The position numbers and the translations under genes were made by a program. Below, one piece after another: positions 1-53,079 of a DNA stretch of 64,000 nt. This DNA is from Macrostomum lignano. Taxonomy: Eukaryota. The stretch spans positions 183,683-247,682 of the forward strand of contig NIVC01001050.1 of the NCBI GenBank assembly GCA_002269645.1, given 5' to 3'. The notes under the pieces were generated by a model. That model ran no database searches, had not been told where the DNA came from, and was given only the letters and a program-made list of their open reading frames with translations. How positions within the stretch are numbered: position 1 is the first letter of the stretch; each line of letters starts with the position of its first letter.

Positions 1-2627
1 CCTGCAGGATCTGGTGTCGCAGACAGCTATTAAGCCCTACGTATTCACTGGAACAAACCTGCATACTTTGCTGGCTCACTCAGAGTCCGGAATTTACAAA
101 CAGGTGGCCGACAAGATGATCGAGCTTGGACCCTACGACGACTGCCCATCCAAGGTGAGTAAATTCGGTTTTGTCTTTGCCATGACCGCTGCTGGCGCCC
201 CCCCACTCCACGAATATGCATCAATCCACGAATACCATTAGGGGCGACGTTGTTATTGGCATATTCGTGGAGTGGGGGGGGCGCCAGCAGCGGTGATATA
301 CCGCGCCCCACAATGGCACGACCGAGATAGCACCCCTAAATCACATGCCCGAGATAGCAACCCTCAATCACATGATCGAGGTAGCACCCCTCAATTACGT
401 GCCCGAGATAGCATCCCTCAATGGCATGCCCGAGATAGCATGCCCGAGATAGCATGCCCGAGATAGCATGCCCGAGATAGCATGCCCGAGATAGCATGCC
501 CGAGATAGCATGCCCGAGATAGCATGCCCGAGATAGCATGCCCGAGATAGCATGCCCGAGATAGCATGCCCGAGATAGCATGCCCGAGATAGCATGCCCG
601 AGATAGCATGCCCGAGATAGCATGCCCGAGATAGCATGCCCGAGATAGCATGCCCGAGATAGCATGCCCGAGATAGCATGCCCGAGATAGCATGCCCGAG
701 ATAGCATGCCCGAGATAGCATGCCCGAGATAGCATGCCCGAGATAGCATGCCCGAGATAGCATGCCCGAGATAGCATGCCCGAGATAGCATGCCCGAGAT
801 AGCATGCCCGAGATAGCATGCCCGAGATAGCATGCCCGAGATAGCATGCCCGAGATAGCATGCCCGAGATAGCATGCCCGAGATAGCATGCCCGAGATAG
901 CATGCCCGAGATAGCATGCCCGAGATAGCATGCCCGAGATAGCATGCCCGAGATAGCATGCCCGAGATAGCATGCCCGAGATAGCATGCCCGAGATAGCA
1001 TGCCCGAGATAGCATGCCCGAGATAGCATGCCCGAGATAGCATGCCCGAGATAGCATGCCCGAGATAGCATGCCCGAGATAGCATGCCCGAGATAGCATG
1101 CCCGAGATAGCATGCCCGAGATAGCATGCCCGAGATAGCATGCCCGAGATAGCATGCCCGAGATAGCATGCCCGAGATAGCATGCCCGAGATAGCATGCC
1201 CGAGATAGCATGCCCGAGATAGCATGCCCGAGATAGCATGCCCGAGATAGCATGCCCGAGATAGCATGCCCGAGATAGCATGCCCGAGATAGCATGCCCG
1301 AGATAGCATGCCCGAGATAGCATGCCCGAGATAGCATGCCCGAGATAGCATGCCCGAGATAGCATGCCCGAGATAGCATGCCCGAGATAGCATGCCCGAG
1401 ATAGCATGCCCGAGATAGCATGCCCGAGATAGCATGCCCGAGATAGCATGCCCGAGATAGCATGCCCGAGATAGCATGCCCGAGATAGCATGCCCGAGAT
1501 AGCATGCCCGAGATAGCATGCCCGAGATAGCATGCCCGAGATAGCATGCCCGAGATAGCATGCCCGAGATAGCATGCCCGAGATAGCATGCCCGAGATAG
1601 CATGCCCGAGATAGCAGTCCTCAATGGCAAGCCAGAGATATTGCACCCTGCTATGACTTCGCCCTCGCCCCTCGCTGTCAACACTCCGCTGAACCCCAAA
1701 GATGATCCCTAATAAAAATCCTTGACGACTTGAAGTCTGATCCGCATGAATAACAATTCCGGGCCTTAACTCTTTCAGCCGGCACAACCCGACCAGGCCT
1801 GCATAGTTGACTACTCATACTTGCTGGCGATTGCTAGGAAAAATTGCTCCCAGTTCTACCTGGCCGATGAGCTATTCAACACGGCCACTTTGGCTTACAT
1901 GTTTCAGGAGGATGCCTACTTTGCCGATTTGTTTAATTTTCAGTAAGTTTCGCTTGGTTTAATTCAGTGATCACTTCAAATTGATAAATTCATTTCTAAG
2001 ATGAAGGTCTTAAGTTTAATATAACACTAAAATTGACTATTGTCTCAACTTCTGAACTTAATAATAGCAAATGAAGCAACTAGGTGTTTTATCAAAATTG
2101 CACCCACACTGGAGTTCCAGTCGAAGTTCAGCTGTTCCCATCTCTGTAGTGTATGTTTTCTGGACAGATTTGTGAATGCAACTCGAACAAAACACATTCT
2201 TGCTTCATTCGGAATTCGGAAGTCCAGAAGGTGAAATATTGGAAATTCTGTGCTAAAACAACTGATAAATTCCTAACTCGCTGATGAATTTGCAGTGAAC
2301 TTTGCACTATTTGCGAGTGCAACGTCCTTGCTTTACTTGCCTCTGTATTAAATATCACAATAGTAATTTGTTAATTCGTCAACGCACAGCATGCAGAAGC
2401 TGCATGAGAGCGGCCAGATACAGCGCTGGTTCGATAAGTACTGGTCCAGCGACAACACCTGCAGCGTTGGCGCATCAACCGAGGCGGCATCCATCAACCT
2501 GGAAGGCGCTGGCGGGTGCTTCATCACTAGCCTGATTTTGTACGTTGTGGGACTGCTAATCCTGCTGGTGGAACTGGCCTGGACTAAGCTAGCCAAGAGA
2601 CAGCCACTTGACTGTGTGATCTACTAA
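1..2627 (+). CDS. Ionotropic glutamate receptor-like paralog 1, 3' part (S2, M4, C-terminus); 5' end outside window
   Basis: Exons <1-154, 1779-1942 and 2390-2627 with GT-AG introns and consistent phases. Reads LQDLVSQTAIKPYVFTGTNLHTLL...CPSK|PAQPDQACIVDY...FNF|HMQKLHESGQIQRWFDKYW...LEGAGGCFITSLILYVVGLLILLVELAW...DCVIY*. Intron positions match the complete paralog at 4504-9490. Confidence 0.9.
185..294. repeat. Near-perfect inverted repeat (about 35-bp arms, 39-nt loop), MITE/foldback-like, intronic
   Basis: ACCGCTGCTGGCGCCCCCCCACTCCACGAATATGC (185-219) is the reverse complement of 259-294 apart from one extra G in the G-run. Confidence 0.85.
301..1640. repeat. 14-bp minisatellite (GCATGCCCGAGATA) x85 embedded in degenerate 27-bp units
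   Basis: Perfect 14-mer from 424 to 1613, flanked by degenerate 27-mers such as CACCCCTCAATGGCATGCCCGAGATAG. Lies in an intron of iGluR paralog 1. Confidence 0.97.
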
Positions 2628-4503: not shown

Positions 4504-7500
4504 ATGGCGGCCATCTTTTTTATGTGCATATATCTCCTACTAAGCTGCACATCCGGCCTGGACTTCAAGATAGGCGTGATCACGGAGGCCGGAAGCTTGA
4601 ACGGCTCGCTCATCGACATCGCCTTCGCCAGACGGGTCAACTACAACTGGAGAGTGCTGCAGGGCCACACACTCTCATATGTGCATGTCAATGTGAGCTC
4701 GTGCAGCTCACACCAGGCTGTCAGGACTGGTGAGTTGAAGCATTTGCTACGCGACTCAATCGCTGCTCTGCTCAACCTGCTCAATCAATGCACACAATTG
4801 AAGCATGAATTGCACGAATGCAAGTGTGAGTGCGAGCTGTGAAACTGTGCATGTGTCTGTGTGTCTCGCTCCGCAGTGTGCTCGGAAAGCGGCCTGTCAG
4901 GTCTGATTGGCGTCGGCAGCTGCTCTCTGCTGGATGAAGTGAGCTCACTGAGCAAGTCTCTGCAGCTGCCGCTGATCGCCCTGCCGACTGGACTGTGCGA
5001 CTCTGCTCGGCTGAGCAAAGGTAACTGAGATCGATTTCTGACATCTTGCCACCATTTCTATCTGTATTCGGTTTCGACATGAAATCACGCGGAATTGCAG
5101 ACATGACCATCGTGGGCAGCCACAGCTCAGACAACATCGTCGCTGCAGCCGCCACCGTCCTTACGTCAGATTCCATAGTTAGCAGTGTGGCAGTTTTCTT
5201 CGATAATCTGCAAAGTGAGTGCTGTGAATAAAGTAAAATCCTAGAGAGCTCCAATATTTTCAGTATATTTACGGATGTTTCTTCTATCAAAGTTCAAAAA
5301 GTCAGACATAACTAAAGTCTATACTTGATCACTGTAGGCACAACAGTGCTGCAGAGCCTGCAGTCCAGCCTCTCCTCTGCCGGTGTGAGCAGTCTCACAT
5401 TCCGAGTGGACGACACTGTCAACGCTTCTGTTACTCCTGACCTGGTGCACCACCTCAAGCGGCTGGTCAAGAAGAAAGTGTTCAAGCTGCTGCTGCTCGC
5501 CTCTCCTCGCAATGCTCTCAGTGTGCTCAGGCTCGCCAGGGAAGCTGCAGTGATGCAGCAGAACTACTTCTGGCTTGTGCTCGACACCGGACTGTCCAAG
5601 GCCGATGTGCTCAGCGTGACGCCGACGAACGCGAACGTCGCTCTGCTGAGAGGCAGCGTGTTCACCGAGTGCACAGCAGCAGTGATGGATGTGCTTCCTC
5701 AGTGCCAGACGGACTGGCTTCGGGTGAGCGTTTCATGTGTGCTGCTTGATGGCTGCAGGGATTCATCATGCAGCACCGCACGTGTGCAATGCATGCCTCT
5801 GTCGCACTCGATCTCGCACTCGATCGTCGCATTCGCATTCGACAGACTCTGGACGCTCGCTTCGTAGACGCCGTAGAAGCCATGGCCAAGGCGCTCAATG
5901 ACTCGCTGCTGGATCCGGGATTCTCTCCCGGCAACGCCTCGTGTGCGCCTCTGCGCCACTGGACATCGGGCTCGACTGTGCTCAACAGACTCATGAGTGT
6001 GAGTGAGCTCACTAGCTAGCTAGCATTGACAAGCATTATTAGTTTCAAGCTGGTCTCTCCCCAATCCCTACTCGATGTGCAGATCAGCGACTATGACACT
6101 CAGCGAGGCCTGATCTCGTTCAACAGCTTGACCAGACACTTCAGCTCGCAACGAGTCGAAGTGGTCGCGTCCTACAATGAGCTGTGGTCGTCTCCGGTCT
6201 CGATGCTGAGGTCGGCTCAGTTCGATGCATCGAGCGGAGCTCTGAGCAAGCAGTTTCGCTACAAGGGAGTCAGTTTGGCATTCCCCAACACCTTCATGGG
6301 GTTCAAGAATGCTACAATTGTTATTTGCACTCCTCAGGTAGCGTTGAACGAAGATATATAATGACTGGGTTGATAAAAAACAACAATTCTATAAATCATC
6401 AAACGTGTATAGTGAATTTTTATAACTTTTAGACTTCTCCAAAGACAGTCTTTATGGAGAAGTTTTTGAATAACACTGTTATTATATCAGGACTGACGCG
6501 AGACATTCTTGACATCTTGTCTTCAAGACTAGATTTTAAGTGAGTTTTCCACTGAACTTCAGAATTTAAATAATTATTTGTTCGATCAATTTTGATTGTT
6601 TTGTTTAAATGAAGGTTTATTACGAAAGACTCGGACGATGGAAATTGGGGCGCGCCGCAGGTGGGCTTGAGCTATTTTACTGGCTGTGTAGGAGAGCTTC
6701 AGAGAGGAGTGAGTTCGTTTCGCATTTGTGTTGTTTTGTGCTTGTGGAGAGCTTTGTGGAAACTTTGTGGTCAACAGTTATTATAAATGAAATATAATTG
6801 AATATTTGTTGAAACTTCAGATGGTTAACCTTTCTGCTGGACCATTTACAAAGACCGCCATCCGAGAGTCAGTGGTTGATTTTTCAACCCCTTTATTTCA
6901 AGAATCTAACGCCGTGCTGGTGGTAAAAGCGGAGCCTCTTTCAAAAGCGTGGAACATTTTCATGCCATTCAGCTGGGATGTCTGGCTGGCCCTGGTCGGC
7001 TTTCTCGCGGTCTGCTCCATGGCAATGTGGCTATTAGCTTATTTCTGTCCATTCTCTGCCTACAACTTGGGCATGCAGTATGCAGTTGCTGACGAGCTCT
7101 GGTTGCAAGAGTACATCTGGAGCGCCATTGGAAGCTTTCTACAGCAAGGTCAGGACTTCTACCCATTTGCAATGTCGCCAAGAACTGTTATGTCTTTCTG
7201 GTGGATGTTCACCGTGATCATCTATGGAGCATACACCGGTAGGTCTTTTAAAAAACTTCGGGCGTTTTTGGCGGTTTTGAGAATTATTTTGTTGATTCGA
7301 TCGGTTAAAATTCGGGATCCTATTCTTTCTAGAGTGATGAAAGCTGGGGCGGTATTGAATTTTTAAGGATCAATAGTCAAAAAGCGGTACAATAAATTTT
7401 CACAGGCGATCTAACTGCTCACCTTACGGTTACTGTCACTGACTATCCAATCAAGACACTGGCAGATCTAGCGTCACAGAGCCAGATAAAACCAGTAGTG

Positions 7501-9490
7501 AACGATGGAACCAATCTGTACACCCTGCTCACTGAGGCGCAGTCTGGTGTGTACACACAGATTGCGGACCAAATGCTCGTCATAGCATCCAACGCTAATT
7601 GTCCAAAGAAGGTCTGTTTCACAATATTCTAGATTAAATTTTTGTTTCTTTAATTTAACTTCACTTGAACAATCGGAAATATTTTTAGCCACCAGTAAAG
7701 AGCGAAGCTTGCATTGCTGACTACACAACTTTGCTAGCCGTTGCGACGAAAAACTGCAGCCAGTACTACTTAGCTAAAGAGTTATTTAACACGGCGACTG
7801 TGGCATTCATGTATCCGAAAGATGCCTACTATGCTGGCCTGTTTGATTTTCAGTAAGTTGTGTTGGCTACATGCTGACTTTAAGGCAGGTTGTCTCTTGC
7901 ATTACATAGGAAAAGAGATTATTTGAGTACAAATTAACACAGCAATGTAATGGGGGCCGATCAACAAACCAGTTGCCTATCTGACCCTCGCACACAATGT
8001 AACGATTGTGGTCATTATTGTACCCTTTTGACTTCCCCTGTCTATGGCCCAGACATGTATAGTGCGGATGCTGAGTATGAAATGCGATTGTTGCCGGAAT
8101 GCGCTTTGAAAGGGTTGTAGAGATAATCAATCGTCTATGGCAAATTTAGTTGCTCTCTAAATGAAAGGGTTGTAGAGATAATTAATCGTTTATGGCAAAT
8201 TTAAAGGACAGTGAAGACAGCTAGCCTGCTGCCATGAGTTAATTCTCAAGTTGATTTTGAGCTTGAATTAATTCTCCTATTCGGAGTGCAAATAGGAAAA
8301 CTAGCTATGATTCGCTACGCAAAAATTCCTGGCTCAATAAGTCTGGCTTCTCAGCCTGCCAACGACTCGGTAAAGATTCACTTGGAGACTTCATGAAGAA
8401 TCTGAGTGCGTGTCTGGCTCTGCAGCGGAAGTACACCAACCATTGTGTGCGAGTAACCACGGTGAGTAAAGATTGCATGGCCTACTCACTTCAGTAAAAC
8501 TGTAAGAATACTGTCTTACCCAACTGCTGAAACTTAGGTGAACTGTTTGGCCAAGGCCGGTTTCGATAATCAAGCGATTACACTAATGACGGGACACAAG
8601 AATTCGAGCTCAGTGGATGTATACAAGCGGCGAGACATGGACTGTGTGGCCCGAATGAGCGCTTGTCTGGCTGCCTATGGGTCCAAAGTCACCAAGATTG
8701 ACGACGATGCGGAATCCACCATCGAAAGTGTGACAACTGGGTCTGATAGAGGCGAGCTGATGAAAGCACCGAGGACGGCCAAGACCTGCCGAGAAGCCTC
8801 TGTGGTGGTCAGTTCCACAACTGCACATTCAACTTTTACGGAAAGTAAAACAATTGATTCGATCGGTTTGTTCTTAAGAACTTTTTGTGACTATGAAACA
8901 CTTTCGCCGTGTTGCTATTGTTGTTCCTTGTTTTGATAGCCAAATACATTCGTCTGAAATCCGGCAACAATCGAAAAAAGCCGACAAACAATTAAATTGT
9001 TACCGCAAGTATGAATGCCGGAAACCATAGACAAAAGGGAACAATGGTACTCAGCTTCGATTTGTGCCTGCGTTACGAATTTGTGTGGCTTCCGGTCCAC
9101 TACCACCTTGATTTTCGGCAGAGCCGAATGCCCCCCCCCCTGCAAATTAAGGCCAGTTCACACATTGGCACTTATAGCTCCACGGGTCAAATAGTGCTCA
9201 AATCAAAGTGGTGTTGGTTCAAGACTCATTTTAAAACGAACTATTCCAGCATGCAGAAACTGCACGAGGCGGGCGTGATGAGGCGTCTATTTAATATCTA
9301 CTGGTCCAGCGACCAGGACTGCGGCTCCAGCACATCCACAACGGATGCCGACAACATCGATATGGAAGGCATAGCGGGTTGCCTTGTTGTCACTGGGTGT
9401 CTGTACGCCATCGGGTTGCTAATTCTGGTGCTGGAATTGGCTTGGACTCGACTGTGCAACAGGAGACCGATGGACTGCGTACTGTACTAG
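4504..9490 (+). CDS. Ionotropic glutamate receptor-like paralog 2, complete (835 aa: signal peptide, ATD, S1, M1-M3, S2, M4)
   Basis: 12 exons: 4504-4729, 4877-5020, 5101-5214, 5338-5723, 5846-5998, 6083-6337, 6433-6539, 6615-6708, 6821-7238, 7406-7611, 7689-7852, 9250-9490. Total 2508 nt, all GT-AG and phase-consistent. Motifs: DGNWGA..FTGCVGELQRG, GPFTKTAIRESVVDFSTP, PFSWDVW, WSAIGSFLQQG, WWMFTVIIYGAYTGDLTAHLT. Confidence 0.93.
7921..9204 (+). mobile_element. Crypton-like (tyrosine recombinase) element remnant nested in the last intron of iGluR paralog 2
   Basis: Spliced frame 8296-8461 + 8538-8936 (76-nt GT-AG intron) reads ...QRLGKDSLGDFMKNLSACLALQRKYTNHCVRVTT|VNCLAKAGFDNQAITLMTGHKNSSSVDVYKR, matching the YR C-terminal HxxR...GH...Y pattern. 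Flanked by degenerate inverted repeats (exact 14-mer 8085-8098 vs 8960-8973). Outer boundaries approximate. Confidence 0.8.
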
Positions 9491-9665
9491 CCGATTCTGG
9501 TTCGGCTTGACTAGACTAAAAAAACTGATTTAAAAACAGTGTACCCCGACAGATTTTATGCCAGTAAAAAAAAATACGCTCTCGGCTACTGCAAAAGCAG
9601 ACTAATTGGCCTAATGGCACTTAAGCAGCAATCAAGAAGCAGCATTGCTGAAGAATTCATTTCTA

Positions 9666-10307
9666 GGCACTCATTTTAGCGCCACAGGCACTCATTTTAG
9701 CGCCACAGACACTCATTTTAGCACCACAGACACTCATTTTAGCACCTCAGGCACTCATTTTAGCACCTCAGGCACTCATTTTAGCGCCACAGTCACTCAT
9801 TTTGGCGCCACAGTCACTCATTTTGGCGCCACAGACACTCATTTTAGCACCTCAGGCACTCATTTTAGCGCCACAGGCACTCATTTTAGCGCCACAGACA
9901 CTCATTTTGGCGCCACAGTCACTCATTTTGGCGCCACAGACACTCATTTTAGCACCACAGACACTCATTTTAGCACCTCAGGCACTCATTTTAGCACCTC
10001 AGGCACTCATTTTAGCACCTCAGGCACTCATTTTAGCACCTCAGGCACTCATTTTAGCGCCACAGTCACTCATTTTGGCGCCACAGACACTCATTTTAGC
10101 ACCTCAGGCACTCATTTTAGCGCCATAGACACTCATTTTAGCGCCACAGACACTCATTTTAGCACCTCAGGCACTCATTTTAGCGCCATAGACACTCATT
10201 TTAGCGCCACAGGCACTCATTTTAGCGCCACAGGCACTCATTTTAGCGCCACAGGCACTCATTTTAACGCCACAGGCACTCATTTTAGCGCCACAGGCAC
10301 TTATTTT
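9666..10307. repeat. 21-bp minisatellite (GGCACTCATTTTAGCGCCACA), about 30 copies
   Basis: Direct inspection; variants GCCACA/ACCTCA and GGC/GAC/GTC. Confidence 0.95.
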
Positions 10308-11781
10308 GTTAATTATTAACAAGTTATTGATTACCGCAACGAGTCACAAGGTGGGGTTGGGGGGACAAAGCATTGAAATGTCCCCCATAGCTTTTACTGG
10401 GAGACATGTCCCCCCTGTCACTCCCTCCCCGGTGGCGACGCGCCTGGGAATGACGTTGGATGTGCTGAATGATCGAGCTTTGAAACTTTAGCGTAGGTTT
10501 TTCGTACTCACGATTTAAGACCTAATTTATAGCTTATAAAATTTATAAGATTGCATGCTACAGGTACATGCAGTTATCAGTATGTAGGAAATGCACGAGA
10601 CTGGCCTAATGTAGCAGTTTGTTAATGTATATTCGGCCAGCAATACGAATAATCGGTCTTGTGCAACTTCGCTGAGGCCATCCGATCAACTTAGAGGGCG
10701 TCGGTCGGTAGCGGTTCCGTCTACGTATTCTGCCTGTACGGTCAAGAGGCTGCTAAAGCCGTTGTTTGAGCTCTGCTGTACAAAGCTTGCAAGAATTAGC
10801 CGCTGAATTGTCGAATCTATTGCTCAAACTAACTTGACTCTTTCAACAGGGGTTGCCAGGTTGATCTAAATGAAAGTTTAACATCTGCACCGCACTAAAA
10901 TGCGTCTGTTTGAACAAAACAGTTTGTTTAAATAATTAGGTTATTTAGAAATATTTGAGTTTTAATAATTAACTTTGAGAGATAAAATAAATAGAACAGT
11001 TAACATTTTTGGTATATTCGATACTGCTCCAGCACCAGCACTACTTATCAGCGTAGTGAATTTTGCTCATTCTATTAAAAATATCATGTCTAACATTTAT
11101 ATTTACAGTTACCAATATGATTTAAAAATAATATTGCTGTGCATTCAATGGCAATTATGTACAGTAAGCAAATTAAGTTTTGCCTGCATGAATTAAAAAA
11201 GCGCAATTGCATATCTAGCTGGGACTTTATTCGTCGCGCACAAAGTAAAAAATGACTGGAAAAGAACAAAAAACTTACAATACTGATGCAAGAATGCAAC
11301 ATGCTATACAAAAAAGCGTAGAAGAGCACCAAAAAGGTTTAAAAAACAGCGTTTGTGATTTTTTGCAATTAGTAGTTGGTACATTGAAGTGTTGACTTAC
11401 ATAGCAAGTTCGACTGTTTTATGTACACAAACACTCGTATGTACATGACTTGGAGTTGGTTGGGCCAATCACAGCAGCTCTCAGTGACCTTGAGTACGGC
11501 TGGCAAACGCGCCCATACAGCCAATCAGAATTAGGGCAGTGAGCAGTCTGCGACCAACCCCGGTTGCTCGGGTGAACTCAGCTGCGTTGATGAAGTAGCT
11601 CTGCAATACATACAACGAGAGGTAGTGTGGTTGACTTGATTTAATTGTAGGTTACGTCAAGACAACTTTTCCATCTCAATACAGGCCCAGACACAAATTA
11701 TTTAATGCTGAAACCCTCACCTTATCGATCAAGACAACCCTACTTAATTCATCTGGACAAACCCACCCGATTGATCTAGAC

Positions 11782-12080
11782 CAGGGCTCGGCAAACTCCA
11801 GCCCGTGAGCCACATGAGGCCTGCGAAGCCTCTCTATCCGGCCCTCGGGTCCTTTGAAGCTTTACAAAAGCAATCCGGCCGGCTCGAGGCTTGTGTCTCT
11901 TCTCAGCTCTTTTCTGTCTTATCTCCTCTCTTATCTCTTCTCTCACTTCTCGTTCTCTATTCTCTTCTGTTCTCTTTACTCTCTTCTCTATTCCCTCTTC
12001 TCTGTCTCCCTCTTCTGGCCCGCAGTCATGCTCTGGATTTTCTATCTTGCCCTGGAGGTAAAAAATTATTCCGACCCCTG
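11782..12080 (+). mobile_element. hAT (Charlie-like) MITE, copy 1
   Basis: Starts CAGGGCTCGGCAAACT after an ATCTAGAC target and ends TTCCGACCCCTG. Shares GCCTCTCTATCCGGCCCTCGGGTCC and a CT-rich interior with copies 2 and 3. Right TSD not matched. Confidence 0.7.
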
Positions 12081-12655
12081 ATTTTGGCAAAACCACCGCT
12101 TTGATCCAAATAGCCCTAACCCATTGGTTTACATGTAGATACTCCAGTTGTATGGGAAACCCAATCCCACTGATCTAGACAACCCATCCTATATTGATCA
12201 AGACCACCAATTCATCAAGACGACCCTACTCGACCCTAACCCCAGCCTACAAGGCATTGTTATGAGTACAAAACTAAAGTATATTTTAAATCGTTCAACA
12301 AGCATAAGATTATAAGCCATCTCACCCAGCCTCGAACAATCACAATGGGAGCAATGTGGCAGCAGAGCAGTTCGGAGCAACAACCGACAATGAGCCCCAG
12401 AGCCATAGCATTGCACTGCAGCACCGCCTTGGCAGCCAGTTCAGAGCAGAGAATCAACAGAAACGCTACGCGACATCGGACTGACTCAAAGCCGGTCAGA
12501 TGATGGTTGAGACAGTGACGTAATTCGGCTTTACCTGATACTTGAGGCAGGCTCATCTGCGATAGTTCACGGGCGACAGTCGTGATGACTCTGGGAGGCT
12601 CAAATCCATTATACTAAAAATGGTCTGTCGGTATCTATCTAGGTCTAATACGTAA

Positions 12656-13085
12656 AGGGGTCGGCAAACTCGAGCCCGCGAGCCCCATGCGGCCGGCAAA
12701 GCCTCTCTATCCGGCCCTCGGGTCCTGTGCAATTTCACAATAGCAATCCGGTCCACTCAAAGTTTTTGTCTCTTCTCAGCTCTCTTCTCTATAATCTCCT
12801 TTCTCTTCGCTTTTCTCTCCTCTCCTATTCTTTTTATTCTCCTCTATTCTTATCTCCTTTATTCCCTCGCATCACCTTTCTCCTTTCTCTTTTCCCTTTA
12901 TTACCTCTCCTCCCTCCCTCCTCTGGACCGCAATCATGCGCTAGGTTATTTATCTGGCTTATTTATTTATCTATCTAGGTCTATCTTTATTTATCTATAT
13001 AAATATCTTGTCTATCTTGTCTATCTTGTCTATCTCTATTTATCTATCTCTTTATTTATCTAGGTAAAAATTTTGCCGGCCTCTG
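12656..13085 (+). mobile_element. hAT (Charlie-like) MITE, copy 2
   Basis: AAGGGGTCGGCAAACT...TTTTGCCGGCCTCTG with the same internal core as copies 1 and 3. No TSD seen. Confidence 0.65.
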
Positions 13086-13211
13086 CTATTCAAGTGCAAT
13101 TTCGTGCGTGTCCACATAGTATCCGTGTGCATGCTCAGGGGTCAGCAGAATGGACATGTACATGTATAACTGTTTGCCTCTTTGCTGGTTTGCGCAGTTG
13201 CAGCGCCATGT

Positions 13212-14612
13212 CTACAGTAGGGCCCGCTCGAGCCCTTCCCTGAACATCCAGCTCAGCCTCACCTCCCGAGCCCTCCTAGCGGCCGCGCCGCCAGCCCAGG
13301 TGGCGCCGAACTCGTCCGCAAATCTGGCCAGTTTCCGCGCCAACCATCGAGTCTTGTCAGCGGCAGTGAGACCGCTGCTGACTTCCGGCTGGGGGCACCT
13401 GAGGCATAGTTATAGTCATAGCTTTTACTTATAGCTAGTTTTAGTTATAGCCATATTGGCTTGGATTTGTTCGGTAAATTTTGTAATTAAACCTTTGCCT
13501 TGTCGCCCGGAACAAGTAAAAGTAGTCTTAGCATGCCCAAATCGAAAAAGAAATTTTAAATGGGGAATGTTGCTCTTGCCTTATATTTGGCTACAGTTCC
13601 GTATTTAACTTAGTAGTTCCACTGTTTACCTGTATCCGCTCTATAAGAAATTTAGATTGAGTGCCGGGGCCACAATAAATACTCAAATGTACATTGTTGA
13701 CGCTCACTTCAAGCCTAAAATACTCAGTTTTAAGTCTAGTCTGTCTTGATGCTAATTTTGAAGCCTAAACGCCCCTTTTTGTGGCTTAGAAGCAGAGAAG
13801 CTAATTTTAGCCGTGTGCTGCGTAGGTGAGGGGGCTTAAGAAGAAAATAGTCGTAAATTTGTAAATTCATATCTTTCACGACCTTACTGGCTTCAGTTTA
13901 TTCCATGGCTCTATAGGTCATGGGGCAGCTGCTAAGGCCATGGTTCAATTCAAAATCAAAGGAAAGCTGGTGAGACGCCAATTCCCAAAGGGGAGATGCC
14001 AAAATAGGCTGAAAAGGAAAGCTGATGACTTAGACAGGAAATCGTGACATCAGTGATAGCAAATGATATCTTTGTTTTACACAATCGACATCCAAGAAGC
14101 CAAAACAAATAGTTTTTTTAATTAATCGTTCATTGGGTGCCTCCCCAGAGGGGGGTTGTTATTGCTAGTCCACGTATACTAAAACAAAACTAAATTTTAG
14201 CTCACCAGCCATCCCAGTCACAGTTGGCTTGCCGCATCATAAACAACGCCCTCTCTCGCACATCAGCGTTCATACTACTCAGCCGCTGCAACAGCATCAG
14301 TCTTAGGCTAAGCTTAGCTATATCCGCGCTGCGTTTCTCAACAGATCGAACTTGACTGACAGTGCGAGACTGCGGCTGACTTGACGGTGTTCGCACGCGC
14401 AGCTGGGTCAGATTAAACGCCGAACTCCAAACCGACCCAGCAGTGCCGTCATTGTCATTGGTGACACTGGACATGCTGCTGTTATTCGCATAGGTGGTGC
14501 TGCGCAATCGACGACGCTTGAGTAGTAGGCTGCCTGACTGATTAGCAGGACTCGGCCTGTCTGGTGATACGCGAGCCTGAGTACTGTTGTTGTTTCCATT
14601 TGTTTCAGACAT
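13212..14612 (-). CDS. Two-exon 197-aa protein with BH3-like motif (candidate BH3-only protein)
   Basis: Exon 1 14612-14206 (ATG; ends TG|gtgag) and exon 2 13398-13212 (cctcag|G) splice in phase. Reads MSETNGNNN...CDWDGW|CPQPEVSSGLTAADKTRWLARKLARFADEFGATWAGGAAARRAREVRLSWMFREGLERALL*. TATATAAATA lies about 110 bp upstream. Gene model well supported; function inferred. Confidence 0.7.
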
Positions 14613-14720
14613 TGCTCCGGTTATGCCTGACTATTTATTGCAAGTCATGCGAGTTTAAAAGATTTCAAGTGTTTTGAAAGCACAGCTTCTCTAGCTCTCT
14701 GCCCTAGACTAGTTCGATCT

Positions 14721-14730
14721 TATTTATATA
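14721..14730 (-). promoter_or_regulatory. TATA-like box upstream of the BH3-motif gene
   Basis: Minus strand TATATAAATA about 110 bp before ATG 14612. Confidence 0.4.
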
Positions 14731-15337
14731 CGAGCGTATGTATGCACGTGCTTTGCTAGGAGGAGGGGTGGGCGCGGGGTTGAGACTTGACTGATGCTAT
14801 TTTTAGCACTCGAAAACCCTGAGACCTGAGATACGGGATAAGAGTGGGGGTATGATCTAAAAAAAGAACTAATGTGATCATTTGTTAATTTAGCTCTAGC
14901 CGGTTTATATGTGCACTCGCACTCGCTAGCTATGCCAGATAGATATGGTGAGCTGAATTGAAAATTATACTAGTGACGCGATGTTCTCTTATGAATGTCG
15001 TCAACAAAGCATGACACTAATGTTCCTAAATACATGTACGTTTCCACGACAGCAGCAGCAGTTCAGCGACTGTAAAGTAAGGCACTGCACCGAGGGTAAC
15101 AACCAACAGAAACAGCAATGCGAAAAACAAACAAACAGCAGCAGCAGTGTTGTCTCTCAGTCTGTAAAGAAGCCACTTAAACGGATCAATCAATTGGACA
15201 TCGCATTACTAATGCAAGTAATAACAAAACTAGTATATATGACAAAACAAAATAACAAAACTTTGTCATTATCATACAAAACTAGTATGACAATCGACAA
15301 AACTTAGTAATGACAAAACTACGAGTGTATAGAAGAA

Positions 15338-16066: not shown

Positions 16067-16695
16067 CTGTGTCTGTGTGTCTGTCTGTCTGTGTGTGTGT
16101 CTGTGTGTCTGTCTGTCTGTCTGTGTGTCTGTGTGTCTGTCTGTGTGTCTGTGTATCTGTGTCTGTCTGTATTAGTGTCTGTCTGTCTGTGTGTCTGTCT
16201 GTCTGTCTGTGTGTCTGTCTGTCCGTCTGTGTGTCTGTCTGTCCGTCTGTGTGTCTGTCTGTGTGTCTGTGTGTCTGTCTGTGTGTCTGTCTGTCTGTCT
16301 GTGTGTCTGTGTGTCTGTCTGTGTGTCTGTCTGTCCGTCTGTGTGTCTGTCTGTGTGTCTGTGTGTCTGTCTGTGTGTCTGTCTGTCTGTCTGTCTGTGT
16401 GTCTGTCTGTCTGTCTGTCTCTCTGTCTGTCTGTCTGTCTGTCAGTCTGTCTGTCTGTCTGTCTGTGTGTCTGTCTGTCTGTCTGTGTGTCTGTCTGTCC
16501 GTCTGTGTGTCTGTCTGTGTGTCTTTGTGTCTGTCTGTGTGTCTGTCTGTCCGTCTGTGTGTCTGTCTGTCCGTCTGTGTGTCTGTCTGTGTGTCTGTCT
16601 GTCCGTCTGTGTGTCTGTCTGTGTGTCTGTGTGTCTGTCTGTGTGTCTGTCTGTCCGTCTGTGTGTCTGTCTGTGTGTCTGTCTGTCTGTCTGTG

Positions 16696-16727
<32 letters not shown>

Positions 16728-16768
16728 AGTCTGTCTGTCTGTCTGTCTGTGTGTCTGTCTGTCTGTCT
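16067..16768. repeat. Compound (CTGT)n/(GT)n microsatellite
   Basis: Direct inspection. Confidence 0.97.
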
Positions 16769-17192
16769 ACTTGCCCGTAGTAGAAAAGCTTGTTAACTAG
16801 TAGAATCCAACTCGGTGAAAAAATTGTTCAATGTAATTCAAAATAGAATTCGCGGGTCACCCAGTGACTGGACAGTGTTACCACCGGAAGTGTCACTCCT
16901 CACTATAGTTGGCCACACCCAGAACGCCCAGTCTAGTCACGCAAAGGAGTCATTTTGAGAAATGTTATGATGTTACTATGCATTATTAAAATTTTTATAA
17001 GCTATTATTTTCATACCAATTAGGCTTGTAAAGAAAAAATTAATAAGCACATCTAGGCAACGGGCTTTGGCGTGTCGCATTTTTTTGTGATGAGCTAGCA
17101 GCTCAACGCTTAGTTGCTTGTTAAATTACGAATATACATATTATCGCTGTTTGCTTGCACTTACCTGGATCAGATTTCTTTGGCACTGGGCC

Positions 17193-17940
<748 letters not shown>

Positions 17941-18439
17941 GCTAAAACAAACATAAGTAAGCACGCAATCAAAGGGCGTGACCGCGAGGTCGAGCTTAGT
18001 GAGTAATACGCCGGTTTCAGTGTTAGTTTTCAATTCAGCACAGAATTTAATGAGAGGAAAGCTGCCCCAGCAAGTCCACTTTGGCGTGGCGAAGTCCGGC
18101 GGCTCAGGTTTCTAATTTCATGATATGTCTTGGAACGCTATGCATAGAATTGAGGCCTGGAGCATAGATATCCAGTTTTCGAAATTCTAGTATGTCTGCC
18201 TGAGGAGATGAGGAACTATCATTATTTTAAACTATTCAGTAGACTTGGTGGTCTGGAATCCGAAACGGAAATACTTTCGTTGAGCAACAAAATTGTTTGG
18301 AACTTCTCTGAAGCTTAGTCACATGTGCTGGCTGCCGCTGTTTTTAATACGCCACATATACTACTGCACCGCTATCTGCATGATACAACGGTTTGAATTA
18401 ATGAAGAGCAAAATAACACTGCGACCTTATGTTTACACC

Positions 18440-23308: not shown

Positions 23309-23326
23309 TCTGTCTGTCTGTCTGTG

Positions 23327-23381
<55 letters not shown>

Positions 23382-23487
23382 GTGTCTGTCTGTCTGTCTG
23401 TGTGTCTGTCTGTCTGTCTGTCTGTGTGTCTGTCTGTGTGTCTGTCTGTCTGTCTGTCTGTGTGTCTGTCTGTCTGTCTGTCCGTCT
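23309..23487. repeat. (CTGT)n/(GT)n microsatellite
   Basis: Direct inspection. Confidence 0.95.
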
Positions 23488-25723
23488 CTCTGTGGTGTCA
23501 CTCTGTTTTTTTTTCTAGTGTGCTTCTTTCTTGTCATAGTTACATTCTTCCCGCCTTATTGCCTCCTGACTGTCTCTCACTCGTTACATCTCTCTACATT
23601 TGCTTTCTTCGTTTGTAACTCAGTCAGTTTGTTGCAAGTTTCCCCCAGAAGGTGTGGAGATGGATTCCTGGCCGAGTTCCGTAGTCATTTGCTTCGGCTT
23701 TCAAAGCTGTATGCTGCCACGAGGCCCAATTGAGTCTACAGAAGTTCCGACACGCAAAGCGCCGATCCAAAAGAGAAAAAAACTCTATAGCAAAAATTCA
23801 CTATCATCCGTCTCTTTGCCTGCGAATCTGTTGATAGAGCCTACGATTCTATGTCCAGATTCTAGGTTCGAAATCATTCGCTACATCATTCAATCCCTCT
23901 GTTTTCTTGTCAATTCCTGATGTCTTTCGGACAGATGTGCGTGGATAACGGATTGGGCATAAGCACGTCAACGCTGTAGTTTGGCATAGGGGTCGCCGAG
24001 CAGCTTCCCAGAGTTATCCCAAAATTTAGTGGAATTGTCATCGGCTTGCTTACAGAGGCATTCAACAGAAGCAGGTGAGCAGGAGGGCCCTGTATTGGGA
24101 CTAGGGGAGAGATATTTATTATTACCATCAGTTTATTGCGTTCCCCATATTTCCTCTCCCGTTTCATTTACCTCTAAGCTGATTTTGTTAAAAATAGGCT
24201 AAATCCTGGATGCCCGGTCGCTGTAGTCTCTGTTCCGTACAGTAAGTTGCTGCGTTTTTGTTTGTGTCTGCAAGGCCCTAAAAACCGAAACGGTTCGTTT
24301 TAAGTCAGGATACGACTAGCTTGAATGTTTGGAGTCGCCACTGGCTCTAACGCTCGCCTGTAATTGCCTCTGACACAGGCCGTGCTCTCTCCCTCGCCAA
24401 TCCATGCGTGTCGCCGCTGTCACTTGCCTAACAGACCCTGGCTAGGAGTGAGGCAAGAAATAACACTAGCAACCAAAATGGGCTCGCACCTCTCTGCTAA
24501 CCATGCGGAGCGATCAATACGCTGCGAATGGGTTCTCTAGCCCGCCCCCTTCTCGCCACTAGCTCCCCCTTATTAAAGACGTCCAGCAGCCCTCCCCTCC
24601 CCAAAAAAAGTTGCTGTAAGCTGTTTGCAACGAGATCTGGCTGATCTCAGCTGCCTAGCAGACCCCGATGATAGATAAGAGTACATTTCACCGCATCTCT
24701 GTATTGGACTTACCTCCCCCTGTAATTCCTTTCTAACGATTCCCGTTCCGCCTCTCCCTGCATCGGCTCTGAACAAGTCGTTTTTTTAATCCTCTGGAGG
24801 AAATGATGCTCAAAAAGGGGAAATTTCTGAGGACCAGTCCAATATCATTGCTCGATCTTTATGCTAGAAAGGCCGGGTCGAAGCTTCCTTTAGTGAAATT
24901 TGGTTTTAGCTCAAGCTAGCCTTAGGAACATGAACTTTCAATTTCACTGACTTATGAGATGCTATGGCATACATGAGCTTATATATCTGAAATTAAAAGG
25001 GCCAAACTAGCATGTCAGTAAATCTCAGGCTTATCGAAAAACTATGAGAACTAAAAATAATTCTGGCTGATTTTTATTCTGTTTATTGACTTGAAGAATT
25101 GACTTTTTATCGGCTTTGACCCCATCTACACTCATCTTGCACCGTCATGTCTGTTTAGCACGCTATTTACTGTTCCTGTATTCACAGCATATAACATGTC
25201 ACCAAGGCACAAAATTCAAGATGGAGCGATAAAATTTTATGGAACAAAGAGCAATGATGTCAAATGTCCAATCCGAACTTTTGAGCTGTTGCAGATTCTG
25301 GAGAATAGCAGTTTTTATGGTTGCAGGGTGGCTTGCTCTGAAAATCATGACCGACTTCCCCCCCCCCCCAAGCTGGTGTACCGACCTTAGGGCTGAAAAA
25401 AATCCACAGCGAACCAACCCGTATGGCCATCTGGCAGGGGCTTATTATTTTTCTCCTGTCGCGATATTAATTTCATCGATTTGTCCGATAGTGAGGAGAT
25501 CGAGGGGGACAGGATCGAGAGGACGTCAAGAAATAATGGAGCTCTGCGGAGACCAGAATGCACAGTTCAGCTCCGTATGCAGCCTGAGAGCTCACCGGCT
25601 TTTTCAGCTTGTTTTTTTTTCTCGACAACTTAGGGTGCATTGGTTCTCAAGAAAACTAGCGATTAATGAATCAGTCTGTCTGTCCGTGCTTGCTAGCACA
25701 CTAAAACAATATGCCCTAGTAGA

Positions 25724-50964: not shown

Positions 50965-52290
50965 ATGAGCGTTCAAGCTGTCGTAATCGGAGCCAACGGC
51001 TTCCTGGGTCGACGTCTCGTCGAAACGCTTCGTAGACGCAGAAACTTGCGCGTGTCGGCCAACGAGAAACTTCCTGTGTCGAGCATCGTGCTGTTCGACG
51101 TTGCCGACTCGTCCGATGCCTTCATGCGACGTCAGTGCGACGAGGACAGTCGCTGCTGCTTGGTGCTCGGCAGTCTCACAAAAGCTGAAGACACTGCCGA
51201 GGCTTTGAGGCCACGCGCGACCGACTGCCGAACTGTGGTCAGCTTTCACCTGGCCGCCATGCTTAGCGGACAGGCTGAAGCTAATTTCGACGGCGGAATG
51301 CAGGTGGGCTCAATAGTTTATCGACGTTGCGTCGTACTACATAATAATGATAGTAATACTTATTGCGCGGCGCATCTGAAGGCTGCGTACGGCTGTTCAG
51401 TCGAAAGACTGGGGATGGGAACGTCGTCACACTCAATTTCGTTAAGCTAAAGCCGCCAACTATTTTACAGCTGGGTGAACTGAAGCAATGCAGAGTTAAG
51501 TGTCTTGCTTAAGGACACAAATTGTTTCGAGTTGGTCGAGAATCGAACCCCCGACCTTTCAGTCGTGAGTCCGACGCTCTTCGAGGTTACCGCTTACTGA
51601 GCCACCATTCCATAAATAGAGCGCGCTTCATGACAATTTGCCACCCATAGAGCAACGTTCAATCAGCTAAATCCAGATTCAATAACAAAGAAATCCTGAA
51701 CTTTTTATCCAGGTAAATCTGTTCGGCGCAATCACTGTGATTGAGCAGGTTCGCGCTCTCGGTGTCAAGCTCGGCCGGCCTCAAATCTACGTGTACGTCA
51801 GCACCGACTACGTCGCCTGTTTCAACGACACCAACAGACAAGTGCCAATCAACGAGGAGGCCTTCCGACTGTCCCCGACGTCCTACGGGGTGCACAAGGC
51901 GTGCGTCGAGCTGCTGGTATGCGACTACAGCCGGCACGGCTTCATCGACGGTCGAGTAGCTCGAATCTCGGCCGTGATTGGCCGGCCGGGTTTCAGCAAC
52001 AGCGTCTCCTCGTCCTACAGCATGATCTTCACGCAGACTCTGCTTGGCCGGGATTACACTGTCTACCCGGACATGGACTATCCGTACCCCTGCTCCTGCA
52101 TTGATAACAACTGCCGATGTCTGATTAAACTGGCTGGCAAAGTGACTGCCGAGCAGCTGGGGCACAATCGGGTTGTACAACTGCCTGCCAGGTCTTTTTC
52201 CTTGTTTTCAATTTGTTTGTGTCTTAGCGTCTCTGTCTGTTGGGAGTAATGTGTCTGACTCCCACGCAAAAGTCCACGTCATCGTTTCTT

Positions 52291-52645: not shown

Positions 52646-52664
52646 GTGTACGGAGCGAACCTCA

Positions 52665-53079
<415 letters not shown>

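What the first reader, a model, noticed from the sequence alone, without database searches (positions are those of the whole stretch)
13212..14612. Candidate BH3-only pro-apoptotic protein revealed only by splicing
Exon 2 has no ORF-track entry, but in-phase splicing yields WLARKLARFADEFG (13346-13305). This fits the BH3 pattern of hydrophobic h1-h4, invariant Leu and small-Asp (compare BIM IAQELRRIGDEF, PUMA IGAQLRRMADDL). The rest is disordered and Ser/Asn-rich with a basic KRRRLR patch and a basic amphipathic tail, the usual BH3-only layout. Such proteins are nearly invisible to homology search and few are described in lophotrochozoans. Short motifs can arise by chance, so function is inferred.
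Basis: partly seen in the sequence, partly recalled or inferred. Interest (0 to 1): 0.75.

Follow-up and report, generated by a model that had tools for sequence, protein, structure and literature searches.

The report
Divergent flatworm Bcl-2 family gene
The BH3 cell-death motif and the splice that reveals it are real, but the gene (in the flatworm Macrostomum lignano) runs on through two more exons, and the whole protein looks like a very divergent full-length Bcl-2 family member that standard domain searches miss, not a BH3-only protein.

Summary
The window is Macrostomum lignano DNA. The motif matches the full 13-residue BH3 consensus: one hit in six frames against 0.03 expected. The gene does not stop at 13212. 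The window encodes, at 100% identity, the transcript-derived model PAA72952.1 (297 aa, "hypothetical protein"). That model leaves exon 2 at a GTGAG donor (13263|13262) and adds exons 12556-12326 and 11600-11481.

These exons encode two hydrophobic helices that begin RCRVAFLL, then IVRGW|SYFI with an intron directly after the TGG codon, then a basic-flanked C-terminal anchor. That intron position is the hallmark "BH2-splitting intron" of Bcl-2 homologous genes. The BH3 Leu to BH2 Trp distance is 100 residues, against 96-102 in six human members. hhalign places R210 on the NWGR Arg and W258 on the GGW Trp (P=0.015; P=0.0028 against BAX/BAK/BOK; 1/250 shuffles).

Pfam, PDB and a 1.8-billion-protein HMMER scan find nothing, and AlphaFold confidence is too low to test the fold.

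Best reading (about 0.6): a divergent multi-motif, tail-anchored Bcl-2 homolog, leaning effector-like. The 197-aa BH3-only form survives only as an intron-2 read-through isoform, which is annotated at one paralog.

The parts
14721..14730 (-). TATA-like box TATATAAATA, 109-118 nt upstream of the start codon. It is a possible core promoter and was not tested.
   Evidence: Read directly from the sequence.
14206..14612 (-). Coding exon 1 (residues 1-135 plus 2 nt of W136). It encodes the Ser/Asn-rich disordered N-terminus (1-84), which contains KRRRLRS, followed by predicted helices 85-128 (candidate alpha-1).
   Evidence: 100% tblastn match to PAA72952.1. Donor is TG|gtgagc. Composition; predicted helices.
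13399..14205 (-). Intron 1 (807 nt, GT..AG, phase 2).
   Evidence: The same junction is used in all annotated paralog models.
13263..13398 (-). Coding exon 2 (residues 136-181). It carries the BH3 motif.
13305..13343 (-). BH3 motif LARKLARFADEFG (L155-G167): h1 L155, h2 L159, h3 F162, small A163, D164, E165, h4 F166.
   Evidence: Translation. One regex match in six frames against 0.03 expected. Aligned in register with the BAX BH3 (D164 to D68) in the extended hhalign alignment.
12557..13262 (-). Intron 2 (706 nt, GAG|gtgagg...cgcag|ATG, phase 0).
13212..13262 (-). Start of intron 2.
   Evidence: The same tail is present in the annotated model PAA69557.1 at a paralogous locus. It is 100% identical in the three genomic copies, but so is most of the surrounding DNA.
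12326..12556 (-). Coding exon 3 (residues 182-258). It covers candidate alpha-4, the two most hydrophobic helices (209-229 and 229-255, candidate alpha-5/alpha-6 hairpin), and ends ...IVRGW.
   Evidence: hhalign places 209-263 on BAX 108-163.
12437..12478 (-). BH1-like segment RCRVAFLLILCSEL (R208-L221). R210 aligns with the Arg of NWGR, 46 residues after the BH3 Asp.
12326..12346 (-). BH2-like segment IVIVRGW (I252-W258). The exon ends exactly after the TGG codon of W258.
   Evidence: W258 aligns with W158 of the BAX GGW.
11601..12325 (-). Intron 3 (725 nt, TGG|gtgaga...tgcag|AGC, phase 0). [quoted passage not shown]
   Evidence: Literature: PMC7527217 (discussion) and PMC8998228 (section 2.2), read.
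11481..11600 (-). Coding exon 4 (residues 259-297 plus the TGA stop): SYFINAAEF... and the C-terminal anchor.
11499..11546 (-). Predicted tail-anchor helix LLTALILIGCMGAFAS (277-292), flanked by RR (275-276) and R293.
   Evidence: It aligns with BAX alpha-9 in the extended hhalign alignment.
11226..11231 (-). AATAAA, about 250 nt after the stop codon. It is a candidate poly(A) signal.

Best explanation
Window positions 14612-11481 (minus strand) hold a four-exon Macrostomum lignano gene: BOX15_Mlig001000g1, product PAA72952.1, 297 aa, annotated only as 'hypothetical protein'. I read it as a highly divergent multi-motif Bcl-2 family protein.

Proposed layout:
- a disordered Ser/Asn-rich N-terminal extension (1-84);
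- alpha-1 (about 85-128);
- a loop;
- a hydrophobic alpha-5/alpha-6 hairpin that opens with a degenerate BH1 (VRCR in place of NWGR);
- a degenerate BH2 (RGW in place of GGW), split by the family's hallmark intron;
- a short basic-flanked tail anchor.

Inferred mechanism:
- The protein sits tail-anchored in the mitochondrial outer membrane or the ER.
- It takes part in the BH3-into-groove interactions that decide outer-membrane permeabilisation and cytochrome c release. Published reviews say this route operates in flatworms.

Whether it kills or protects is not settled. I lean towards effector-like (BAX/BAK/BOK-type), in which case the BH3 in alpha-2 would be exposed on activation and would drive oligomerisation.

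Shown here: the exon structure, the motifs, their spacing and the intron position. Inferred: the fold, the localisation and the activity.
For: 1. Gene structure. tblastn of PAA72952.1 maps to the window at 100% identity in four blocks. All three introns are GTGAG...CAG. M. lignano gene models derive from a genome-guided RNA-seq assembly (PMC5730564), so the junctions have transcript support.

2. The BH3 consensus is matched at every position. The window has one hit against 0.03 expected.

3. Profile comparison.
- hhalign of the protein against seven human family members gives its top local hit at 209-263 against BAX 108-163. The seventh, BAK, is 100% identical to P0008.
- That hit puts R210 on the NWGR Arg and W258 on the GGW Trp, with P=0.015.
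- Shuffled sequences reach this score 1/100 (global shuffle) and 2/100 (block shuffle).
- Against BAX+BAK+BOK alone, P=0.0028 in the same register, and 1/250 shuffles of each type reach the score.
- With greedy extension the alignment is collinear over the whole fold, with the BH3 in register (L159 to L63, D164 to D68) and the tail on alpha-9.

4. Intron 3 lies directly after the TGG of W258, in phase 0. [quoted passage not shown] By my own estimate, one of three introns landing on one given codon boundary among about 890 positions has a chance of about 0.003.

5. The Pfam Bcl-2 domain runs from the BH3 Leu to the BH2 Trp and spans 96-102 residues in the six human proteins. Here L159 to W258 is 100 residues.

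6. The two most hydrophobic 19-residue windows fall at the proposed alpha-5/alpha-6 positions. The C-terminus is a 16-residue hydrophobic stretch flanked by Arg.

7. Helices in the single-sequence AlphaFold model (148-181, 190-198, 207-228, 231-256, 258-269, 275-296) map onto BAX alpha-2/3, 4, 5, 6/7, 8 and 9 under the hhalign alignment. The BAX helix limits are from my memory.

8. Lean towards effector-like. The pro-apoptotic profile scores better than the pro-survival one (P 0.0028 against 0.13). Four coding exons match Bak-type genes, whereas pro-survival genes typically have two (PMC8998228). The h3 residue is bulky (Phe).
Against: - No sequence-level family assignment was obtained. Pfam gives no PF00452 hit even at E<=10. 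phmmer against PDB chains finds no Bcl-2 protein.
- A full HMMER scan of 1.84 billion representatives finds only M. lignano itself, plus two spurious repetitive bacterial proteins.
- hhalign against a vertebrate-BAK-only profile gives probability 0.8% and a different register. hhalign's own 'probability' for the best comparison is only 3-11%.
- BH1 keeps only the Arg, and BH2 keeps only G-W.
- Both AlphaFold runs have mean pLDDT of 43-44, so the fold is untested.
- Foldseek finds nothing at E<1. Bcl-xL chains make up 3/23 and 13/24 of the weak hits at E 3-10, but they are copies of one protein and count as one weak hit.
- I tried several profiles, so the best P-value carries a multiple-testing discount.
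- No orthologue from another species was available. The three genomic copies are 97-99% identical in exons and introns alike, so conservation says nothing yet.
- The alpha-5/alpha-6-like segments could equally be membrane-spanning helices.
Confidence: 0.6

Rival explanations
1. Intron 2 is sometimes retained, giving a 197-aa soluble protein: the disordered N-terminus, alpha-1 and the BH3, then VRLSWMFREGLERALL and a stop. It lacks BH1, BH2 and the anchor. It would act as a BH3-only-type killer or sensitiser by inserting its BH3 into the groove of pro-survival Bcl-2 proteins. This can coexist with the main explanation.
For: A 198-aa model with exactly this structure is annotated at a paralogous locus (PAA69557.1, BOX15_Mlig008885g1). 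M. lignano models come from assembled transcripts, and names are shared at 95% identity or more (PMC5730564). The separate name therefore suggests that a distinct read-through transcript was assembled. The BH3 match is complete. From my own knowledge, multi-motif genes in mammals produce BH3-only-like short isoforms (Mcl-1S, Bcl-xS, N-Bak).
Against: The donor that is read through, GAG|gtgagg, is as strong as the gene's other two donors. The locus with the short model has intact exons 3 and 4 downstream. Three of the four full-length models in the cluster, including the one identical to this window, are spliced; a fifth entry (P0005, 288 aa) lacks the first residues but is spliced the same way. 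An assembled retained-intron transcript may simply be unprocessed pre-mRNA. The 16-residue tail shows no constraint beyond that of the neighbouring intron, because the copies are too young.
Confidence: 0.15
2. The 297-aa protein carries a working BH3 but does not have the Bcl-2 fold. It would be a membrane-anchored BH3-bearing protein of the BIK/HRK/BNIP3 type, and the resemblances to BH1 and BH2 would be fortuitous.
For: The BH3 motif and the C-terminal anchor are the two clearest features. The family domain is not detected by Pfam, PDB search or Foldseek.
Against: About 110 mostly hydrophobic, helical residues lie between the BH3 and the anchor, with the spacing of a Bcl-2 core. The hhalign register and the intron after the Trp codon agree independently.
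Confidence: 0.12
3. This is a lineage-restricted membrane protein with no role in cell death. The BH3-like string would be a chance match to a degenerate short motif, and segments 209-229, 229-255 and 277-292 would be three transmembrane helices.
For: BH3 patterns are known to have little predictive value and to give many false positives (PMC9171138). By my own estimate the expected frequency is about 7e-7 per residue, which would still give chance hits across a whole proteome. No homologue exists outside M. lignano. Three hydrophobic segments are present. Exon 3 is unusually Cys-rich (8 of 77 residues), which is not a Bcl-2 family trait.
Against: This reading needs three coincidences together: the motif, the hhalign register at P of about 0.003-0.015, and the intron exactly after the aligned Trp codon. 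The hydrophobic segments contain E220, K224 and E243, and the last one is only 16 residues long.
Confidence: 0.15

Closest known systems
BAX / BAK / BOK (multi-motif pro-apoptotic effectors, Pfam PF00452)
   Same: The order is BH3, BH1, BH2, then a C-terminal anchor. The BH3-Leu to BH2-Trp distance is 100 residues (96-102 in human members). An intron lies directly after the BH2 Trp codon (PMC7527217). The gene has several coding exons, like Bak-type genes (PMC8998228). This is the best profile match, at P=0.0028. The BH3 is complete, with bulky h1-h4 residues.
   Different: NWGR is reduced to VRCR and GGW to RGW. Pfam does not detect the domain. The protein has an extra N-terminal extension of about 85 disordered residues. 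The core helices are rich in Cys. No activity data exist.
MCL-1
   Same: A long, low-complexity regulatory N-terminus precedes the Bcl-2 core and tail anchor.
   Different: The pro-survival profile aligns worse (P=0.13). MCL-1-type genes are reported only from molluscs and their close relatives among lophotrochozoans (PMC11463336). No PEST or BH4 signature was tested.
Flatworm Bcl-2 repertoire (schistosome and planarian Bak-like, Bcl-2-like and BH3-only proteins)
   Same: Same phylum. These animals are reported to use Bak/Bcl-2-controlled cytochrome c release, and schistosomes are reported to have BH3-only proteins (PMC8998228; PMC11463336).
   Different: Those proteins were found by BLAST or domain searches. 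This one is invisible to such searches and has no detectable relative outside M. lignano. I could not obtain their sequences for comparison; the Lee et al. 2011 paper is not held.
BIM / PUMA and other BH3-only proteins
   Same: The BH3 string resembles the canonical h1-h4 / small-Asp pattern, and the N-terminus is disordered.
   Different: The main product has about 130 further residues after the BH3, with core-like helices, BH1/BH2-like motifs and the family intron. Only the intron-2 read-through form would be BH3-only.
BH3-only-like short isoforms of multi-motif genes (Mcl-1S, Bcl-xS, N-Bak; from my own knowledge, not checked here)
   Same: A truncated product that keeps the BH3 and loses BH1 and BH2 would arise from the same gene through alternative processing.
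   Different: Here the route would be intron retention, and the only evidence is one annotated model at a paralog.

Membership tests
Bcl-2 homologous (multi-motif) proteins, Pfam PF00452 | Match to the Pfam Bcl-2 domain at the gathering score | tested here: not met
   No PF00452 hit even at E<=10, for the 297-aa protein, for its C-terminal 148 residues, or for the paralogs. The six human controls score 94-116 bits.
Bcl-2 homologous (multi-motif) proteins, Pfam PF00452 | BH3 motif (h1-small-x-x-Leu-x-x-h3-small-Asp-acidic-h4) in helix alpha-2 | tested here: met
   L155 A R K L159 A R F162 A163 D164 E165 F166 G167. One hit in the window against 0.03 expected. Aligned in register with the BAX BH3.
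Bcl-2 homologous (multi-motif) proteins, Pfam PF00452 | BH1 (NWGR followed by the hydrophobic helix alpha-5), about 44 residues after the BH3 Asp | tested here: inconclusive
   The sequence reads V-R-C-R210-VAFLLILCSEL. Only the Arg and the hydrophobic helix are kept. hhalign puts R210 on the NWGR Arg. D164 to R210 is 46 residues.
Bcl-2 homologous (multi-motif) proteins, Pfam PF00452 | BH2 (W...GGW) | tested here: inconclusive
   The sequence reads IVIVRGW258|SYFI. G-W is kept and aligned to the GGW of BAX. The upstream Trp is absent.
Bcl-2 homologous (multi-motif) proteins, Pfam PF00452 | BH2-splitting intron directly after the TGG codon of the BH2 Trp | tested here: met
   Exon 3 ends GGC TGG|gtgaga in phase 0, and exon 4 carries the anchor. 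The feature is described in PMC7527217 and PMC8998228.
Bcl-2 homologous (multi-motif) proteins, Pfam PF00452 | Domain length from the BH3 Leu to the BH2 Trp of about 100 residues | tested here: met
   L159 to W258 is 100 residues. The six human proteins span 96-102.
Bcl-2 homologous (multi-motif) proteins, Pfam PF00452 | C-terminal hydrophobic tail anchor | tested here: met
   RR-LLTALILIGCMGAFAS-R at residues 275-293, four residues from the C-terminus. Membrane insertion itself was not tested.
Bcl-2 homologous (multi-motif) proteins, Pfam PF00452 | Statistically supported profile similarity to family members | tested here: inconclusive
   hhalign gives P=0.015 (seven members) and P=0.0028 (BAX/BAK/BOK). 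Shuffles reach the score 1-2/100 and 1/250. hhalign's own probability is only 3-11%, and a BAK-only profile fails.
Bcl-2 homologous (multi-motif) proteins, Pfam PF00452 | Bcl-2 fold (helical bundle around a central hydrophobic hairpin, with a BH3-binding groove) | tested here: inconclusive
   AlphaFold without homologues gives pLDDT 43-44 and an all-helical model. Foldseek has no hit below E=1; the weak hits are enriched in Bcl-xL.
Bcl-2 homologous (multi-motif) proteins, Pfam PF00452 | Regulates mitochondrial outer-membrane permeabilisation, or binds BH3 ligands | not testable with these tools
   Needs binding, localisation and cell-death assays.
BH3-only proteins | BH3 is the only BH motif; no Bcl-2 core | tested here: not met
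   The model identical to this window continues through exons 3 and 4, with BH1/BH2-like motifs, the family intron and an anchor.
BH3-only proteins | A product that lacks the core exists (the short isoform) | tested here: inconclusive
   A 198-aa read-through model is annotated at one paralog, where exons 3 and 4 are intact downstream. No read-level RNA data could be examined.
BH3-only proteins | Intrinsically disordered outside the BH3 | tested here: inconclusive
   Residues 1-84 are low-complexity. Residues 85-128 are predicted helical in a low-confidence model.
BH3-only proteins | Binds pro-survival grooves, and kills in a manner that depends on the conserved Leu and Asp | not testable with these tools
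   Needs peptide binding and mutant assays.

The most novel reading that the evidence does not exclude
M. lignano carries a hidden, lineage-specific branch of the Bcl-2 family that has diverged beyond the reach of BLAST and Pfam. The gene would make two products by regulated retention of intron 2: a tail-anchored multi-motif protein and a soluble 197-aa BH3-only-type killer. If so, the 'very limited' flatworm Bcl-2 network inferred from homology surveys is an undercount. It would also mean that BH3-only activity can arise as a splice form of a multi-motif gene outside vertebrates.
Probability: 0.12. Interest if true: 0.6.

Novelty: new member of a known kind. Interest (0 to 1): 0.42.

Why it matters
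Surveys of cell-death genes in lophotrochozoans rely on BLAST and domain searches. They conclude that flatworms keep only a Bak and a few Bcl-2-like genes (PMC11463336). A Bcl-2 homolog recognisable only by motif order, spacing and a conserved intron would show that such surveys miss fast-evolving members. Gene structure could then be used to find them.

M. lignano has RNAi, transgenesis, irradiation assays and a stem-cell system, so the candidate can be tested directly. It also corrects a tempting mistake: a good BH3 string found in a partial gene model would have been filed as a rare invertebrate BH3-only protein.

Tried and rejected
- Pfam on the 197-aa form, the 297-aa form, the C-terminal 148 residues and the paralogs gave nothing relevant. 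The best hit was DUF2568 at E of about 0.2-2.
- phmmer against PDB chains gave only noise, such as betaine-homocysteine methyltransferase at E=0.3.
- The word-indexed search of 5.8 billion proteins and the full HMMER scan of 1.84 billion representatives returned only M. lignano copies. The two other hits, P0006 and P0007, are long repetitive bacterial proteins whose many weak stretches add up. I rejected them as spurious.
- AlphaFold on the full protein and on residues 94-274 had too little confidence to use. Foldseek on both models gave no significant hit.
- hhalign against 18 vertebrate BAK sequences gave probability 0.8%. Its alternative register put FADEFGATWAGG on the BAK BH1 and HHLTGF on the BAK HGLTGF. 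I rejected it because the segment after it (GGAAARRAREMS) is not a hydrophobic alpha-5, and the seven-member profile does not reproduce it.
- Selection analysis on the three genomic copies was uninformative. Exons and introns are both 97-99% identical.
- The sigma-70 promoter and terminator scan is irrelevant for an animal gene.
- Literature: no paper mentions Mlig001000 or Mlig008885. Lee et al. 2011 is not held. The supplements of PMC11463336, PMC8998228 and PMC5730564 hold no usable sequences or gene tables.
- The UniRef name 'DUF4476 domain-containing protein' for one copy could not be reproduced.
Full report
**What is there.** The only relatives of the spliced protein in 5.8 billion sequences are Macrostomum lignano proteins, so the window is genomic DNA of this free-living flatworm. 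On the minus strand an ATG at 14612, preceded by an in-frame TAG, opens a 407-nt exon that ends TGGCTG|gtgagc. The acceptor cctcag|G lies at 13398, and joining in phase 2 gives ...DWDGWCPQPEVSSGLTAADKTRWLARKLARFADEFG.... The same junction appears in every annotated copy of the gene.

**Is the motif more than chance?** L155-A-R-K-L159-A-R-F162-A163-D164-E165-F166-G167 fills every position of the 13-residue BH3 consensus (four hydrophobic positions, the invariant Leu, small-Asp-acidic). A regular expression for that consensus hits once in all six frames of the 64-kb window, at this site. Composition-preserving shuffles give 0.03 hits per window. Across a whole proteome such a pattern would still produce chance hits. 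The literature warns that BH3 patterns alone have little predictive value (PMC9171138). The motif is therefore a good lead and not proof.

The cluster of annotated M. lignano proteins contains 297-299-aa forms and one 198-aa form.
- PAA72952.1 (BOX15_Mlig001000g1, 297 aa, 'hypothetical protein') maps to the window at 100% identity in four blocks: 14612-14206, 13398-13263, 12556-12326 and 11600-11481 including the stop. The introns are 807, 706 and 725 nt, and all are GTGAG...CAG.
- M. lignano gene models derive from a genome-guided RNA-seq assembly, and names are shared by transcripts that are at least 95% identical (PMC5730564). The four-exon structure therefore has transcript support.
- The 198-aa model (PAA69557.1, Mlig008885g1) is a separate read-through transcript at a paralogous locus. 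Exons 3 and 4 are intact downstream of it.

**What the extra exons encode.**
- Exon 3 (residues 182-258) is 60% hydrophobic. It holds the two most hydrophobic 19-residue windows of the protein, at 209-229 and 229-255.
- Exon 3 begins its hydrophobic part with V-R-C-R210-VAFLLILCSEL and ends IVIVRGW258.
- Exon 4 begins SYFINAAEF and ends RR-LLTALILIGCMGAFAS-RTQGH.
- The order BH3, Arg-led hydrophobic helix, G-W, then a basic-flanked C-terminal hydrophobic tail is the layout of a multi-motif Bcl-2 family protein.

**Tests of that idea: negative or uninformative.**
- Pfam gives no Bcl-2 domain hit even at E<=10, whereas six human family members score 94-116 bits.
- phmmer against all PDB chains finds no family member.
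- A full HMMER scan of 1.84 billion representatives finds only M. lignano, plus two spurious repetitive bacterial proteins.
- With no homologues to build an alignment, AlphaFold gives an all-helical model with pLDDT 43-44 for both the full protein and residues 94-274.
- Foldseek finds nothing below E=1. Bcl-xL chains account for 3 of 23 and 13 of 24 of the weak hits at E 3-10. They are redundant copies of one protein, so this amounts to one weak hint.
- hhalign against a vertebrate-BAK-only profile fails, with probability 0.8% and a different register.

**Tests of that idea: positive.**
1. hhalign against a profile of seven human members gives its top hit at 209-263 against BAX 108-163, with P=0.015. 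BAK is identical to P0008. The hit puts R210 on the Arg of NWGR and W258 on the Trp of GGW. Shuffled sequences reach this score in 1/100 (global) and 2/100 (block-wise) trials.
2. Against BAX+BAK+BOK alone the same register gives P=0.0028, and 1/250 shuffles of each type reach it. Against the four pro-survival members P=0.13.
3. With greedy extension the alignment is collinear over the whole fold. The BH3 is in register (L159 to BAX L63, D164 to D68) and the tail falls on alpha-9.
4. Intron 3 lies directly after the TGG codon of W258, in phase 0. [quoted passage not shown] The protein aligner does not use intron positions, so this evidence is independent. My estimate of the chance that one of three introns falls on one given boundary is about 0.003.
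5. The Pfam domain runs from the BH3 Leu to the BH2 Trp and spans 96-102 residues in the six human proteins. Here the distance is 100 residues.
6. The helices in the low-confidence model fall where BAX helices 2/3, 4, 5, 6/7, 8 and 9 fall under the alignment (BAX helix limits are from my memory).

**Weighing.** Each positive result is weak alone. They are largely independent of one another and all point to the same register. I trust the reading less because I tried several profiles, because BH1 and BH2 are each reduced to one or two residues, and because no confident structure or orthologue is available. I put the multi-motif Bcl-2 homolog reading at about 0.6.

**How it would work (inferred).**
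- The protein would be tail-anchored in the mitochondrial outer membrane or ER. A globular helical bundle would carry the BH3 on alpha-2, and an N-terminal regulatory extension of about 85 disordered residues would precede it. That extension contains KRRRLRS and two further RxRxx[ST] strings.
- Flatworms are reported to use Bak/Bcl-2-controlled cytochrome c release (PMC8998228; PMC11463336).
- The direction of action is open. I lean slightly towards effector-like for three reasons: the profile score is better against BAX/BAK/BOK, the gene has four coding exons like Bak-type genes rather than the two typical of pro-survival genes (PMC8998228), and h3 is a bulky Phe.

**Rivals.**
It is compatible with the main reading. 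It is supported only by one annotated model at a paralog, and it may be unprocessed pre-mRNA (0.15).
- (b) A BH3-bearing tail-anchored protein without the Bcl-2 fold, of the BIK/HRK/BNIP3 type (0.12).
- (c) A lineage-restricted, possibly three-pass membrane protein with a chance motif. Exon 3 is oddly Cys-rich, at 8 of 77 residues (0.15).

**Conservation.** The three genomic copies (the window, L001 and L002) are 97-99% identical in exons and in introns. This fits the duplicated DV1 genome described in PMC5730564 and is too recent to show selection. Indels in exons are in frame and all copies keep open reading frames.

**Novelty and verdict.** The gene is annotated, but only as 'hypothetical protein'. 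No paper mentions it. Homology-based surveys of lophotrochozoan apoptosis genes would not have found it (PMC11463336). I class it as a probable new and very divergent member of a known kind, not a new kind. The interpretation 'BH3-only' is not supported for the main product.

Noticed in passing
window 11200-15000; loci L001 and L002 (NIVC01001312.1, NIVC01001862.1): The gene exists in at least three genomic copies that are 97-99% identical across exons, introns and flanks. Large indels occur only in intron 2 and the 3' flank. This fits the duplicated genome of the M. lignano DV1 line.
   Followed up: partly
window 12326-12556 (-), residues 182-258: Exon 3 is unusually Cys-rich (8 of 77 residues). 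Two CC pairs (GCCSELLCCH) lie inside the hydrophobic helices. This is not typical of Bcl-2 family cores. The pairs could be acylation or redox sites, or a sign that these are membrane helices.
   Followed up: no
window 14612-14206 (-), residues 33-38 and 72-77; residues 178-183 span the exon 2/3 junction: Three RxRxx[ST] strings (RRRLRS, RVRTPS, RAREMS) match the basophilic-kinase consensus that regulates some mammalian BH3 proteins.
   Followed up: no
protein P0005 (UniRef A0A1I8J172): One copy of the protein is named 'DUF4476 domain-containing protein' by its source. The current Pfam scan gives no DUF4476 hit for it, even at E<=10.
   Followed up: yes
window 5325-9490 (+): These are exons of an ionotropic glutamate-receptor-like gene. 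ORF 6806-7366 matches Pfam Lig_chan at E=1e-14.
   Followed up: partly
window 34373-36763 (+): Two long ORFs (442 and 315 aa) look like a neprilysin-type M13 peptidase gene. The second scores 23.9 bits against Peptidase_M13, just under the 24.5 cut-off. The first has a Pro/Gln-rich N-terminus and no Pfam hit.
   Followed up: partly
window 50965-52249 (+): These are exons of an NAD-dependent epimerase/dehydratase-like gene. Hits to Epimerase and NAD_binding_4 are at threshold, with E=3e-4.
   Followed up: partly
window 45056-46447 (+): A 463-aa ORF has a long acidic repeat (NEEAEVD/NEEAEID units) and no Pfam match. The opposite strand carries repeat-derived ORFs.
   Followed up: no
window 336-1787, 9645-10319, 16069-18006, 23326-23733, 39881-41023, 41900-42460, 52607-53170, 56787-57356: Many tandem and microsatellite arrays generate long spurious ORFs in several frames, such as SIYLSIYL..., CLSVCLSV..., GTHFSAT... 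and PLPRLQ... . They account for most of the long ORFs in the window.
   Followed up: no
window 58001-64000: GC skew is strongly negative (-0.32 to -0.40) over the last 6 kb. This is much stronger than anywhere else in the window.
   Followed up: no
proteins P0006, P0007: Two long repetitive bacterial surface-type proteins scored E=1e-26 and E=2e-14 against the query. The scores arise from 11-12 weak stretches adding up. This shows that multi-stretch scores on repeats can mimic homology.
   Followed up: yes
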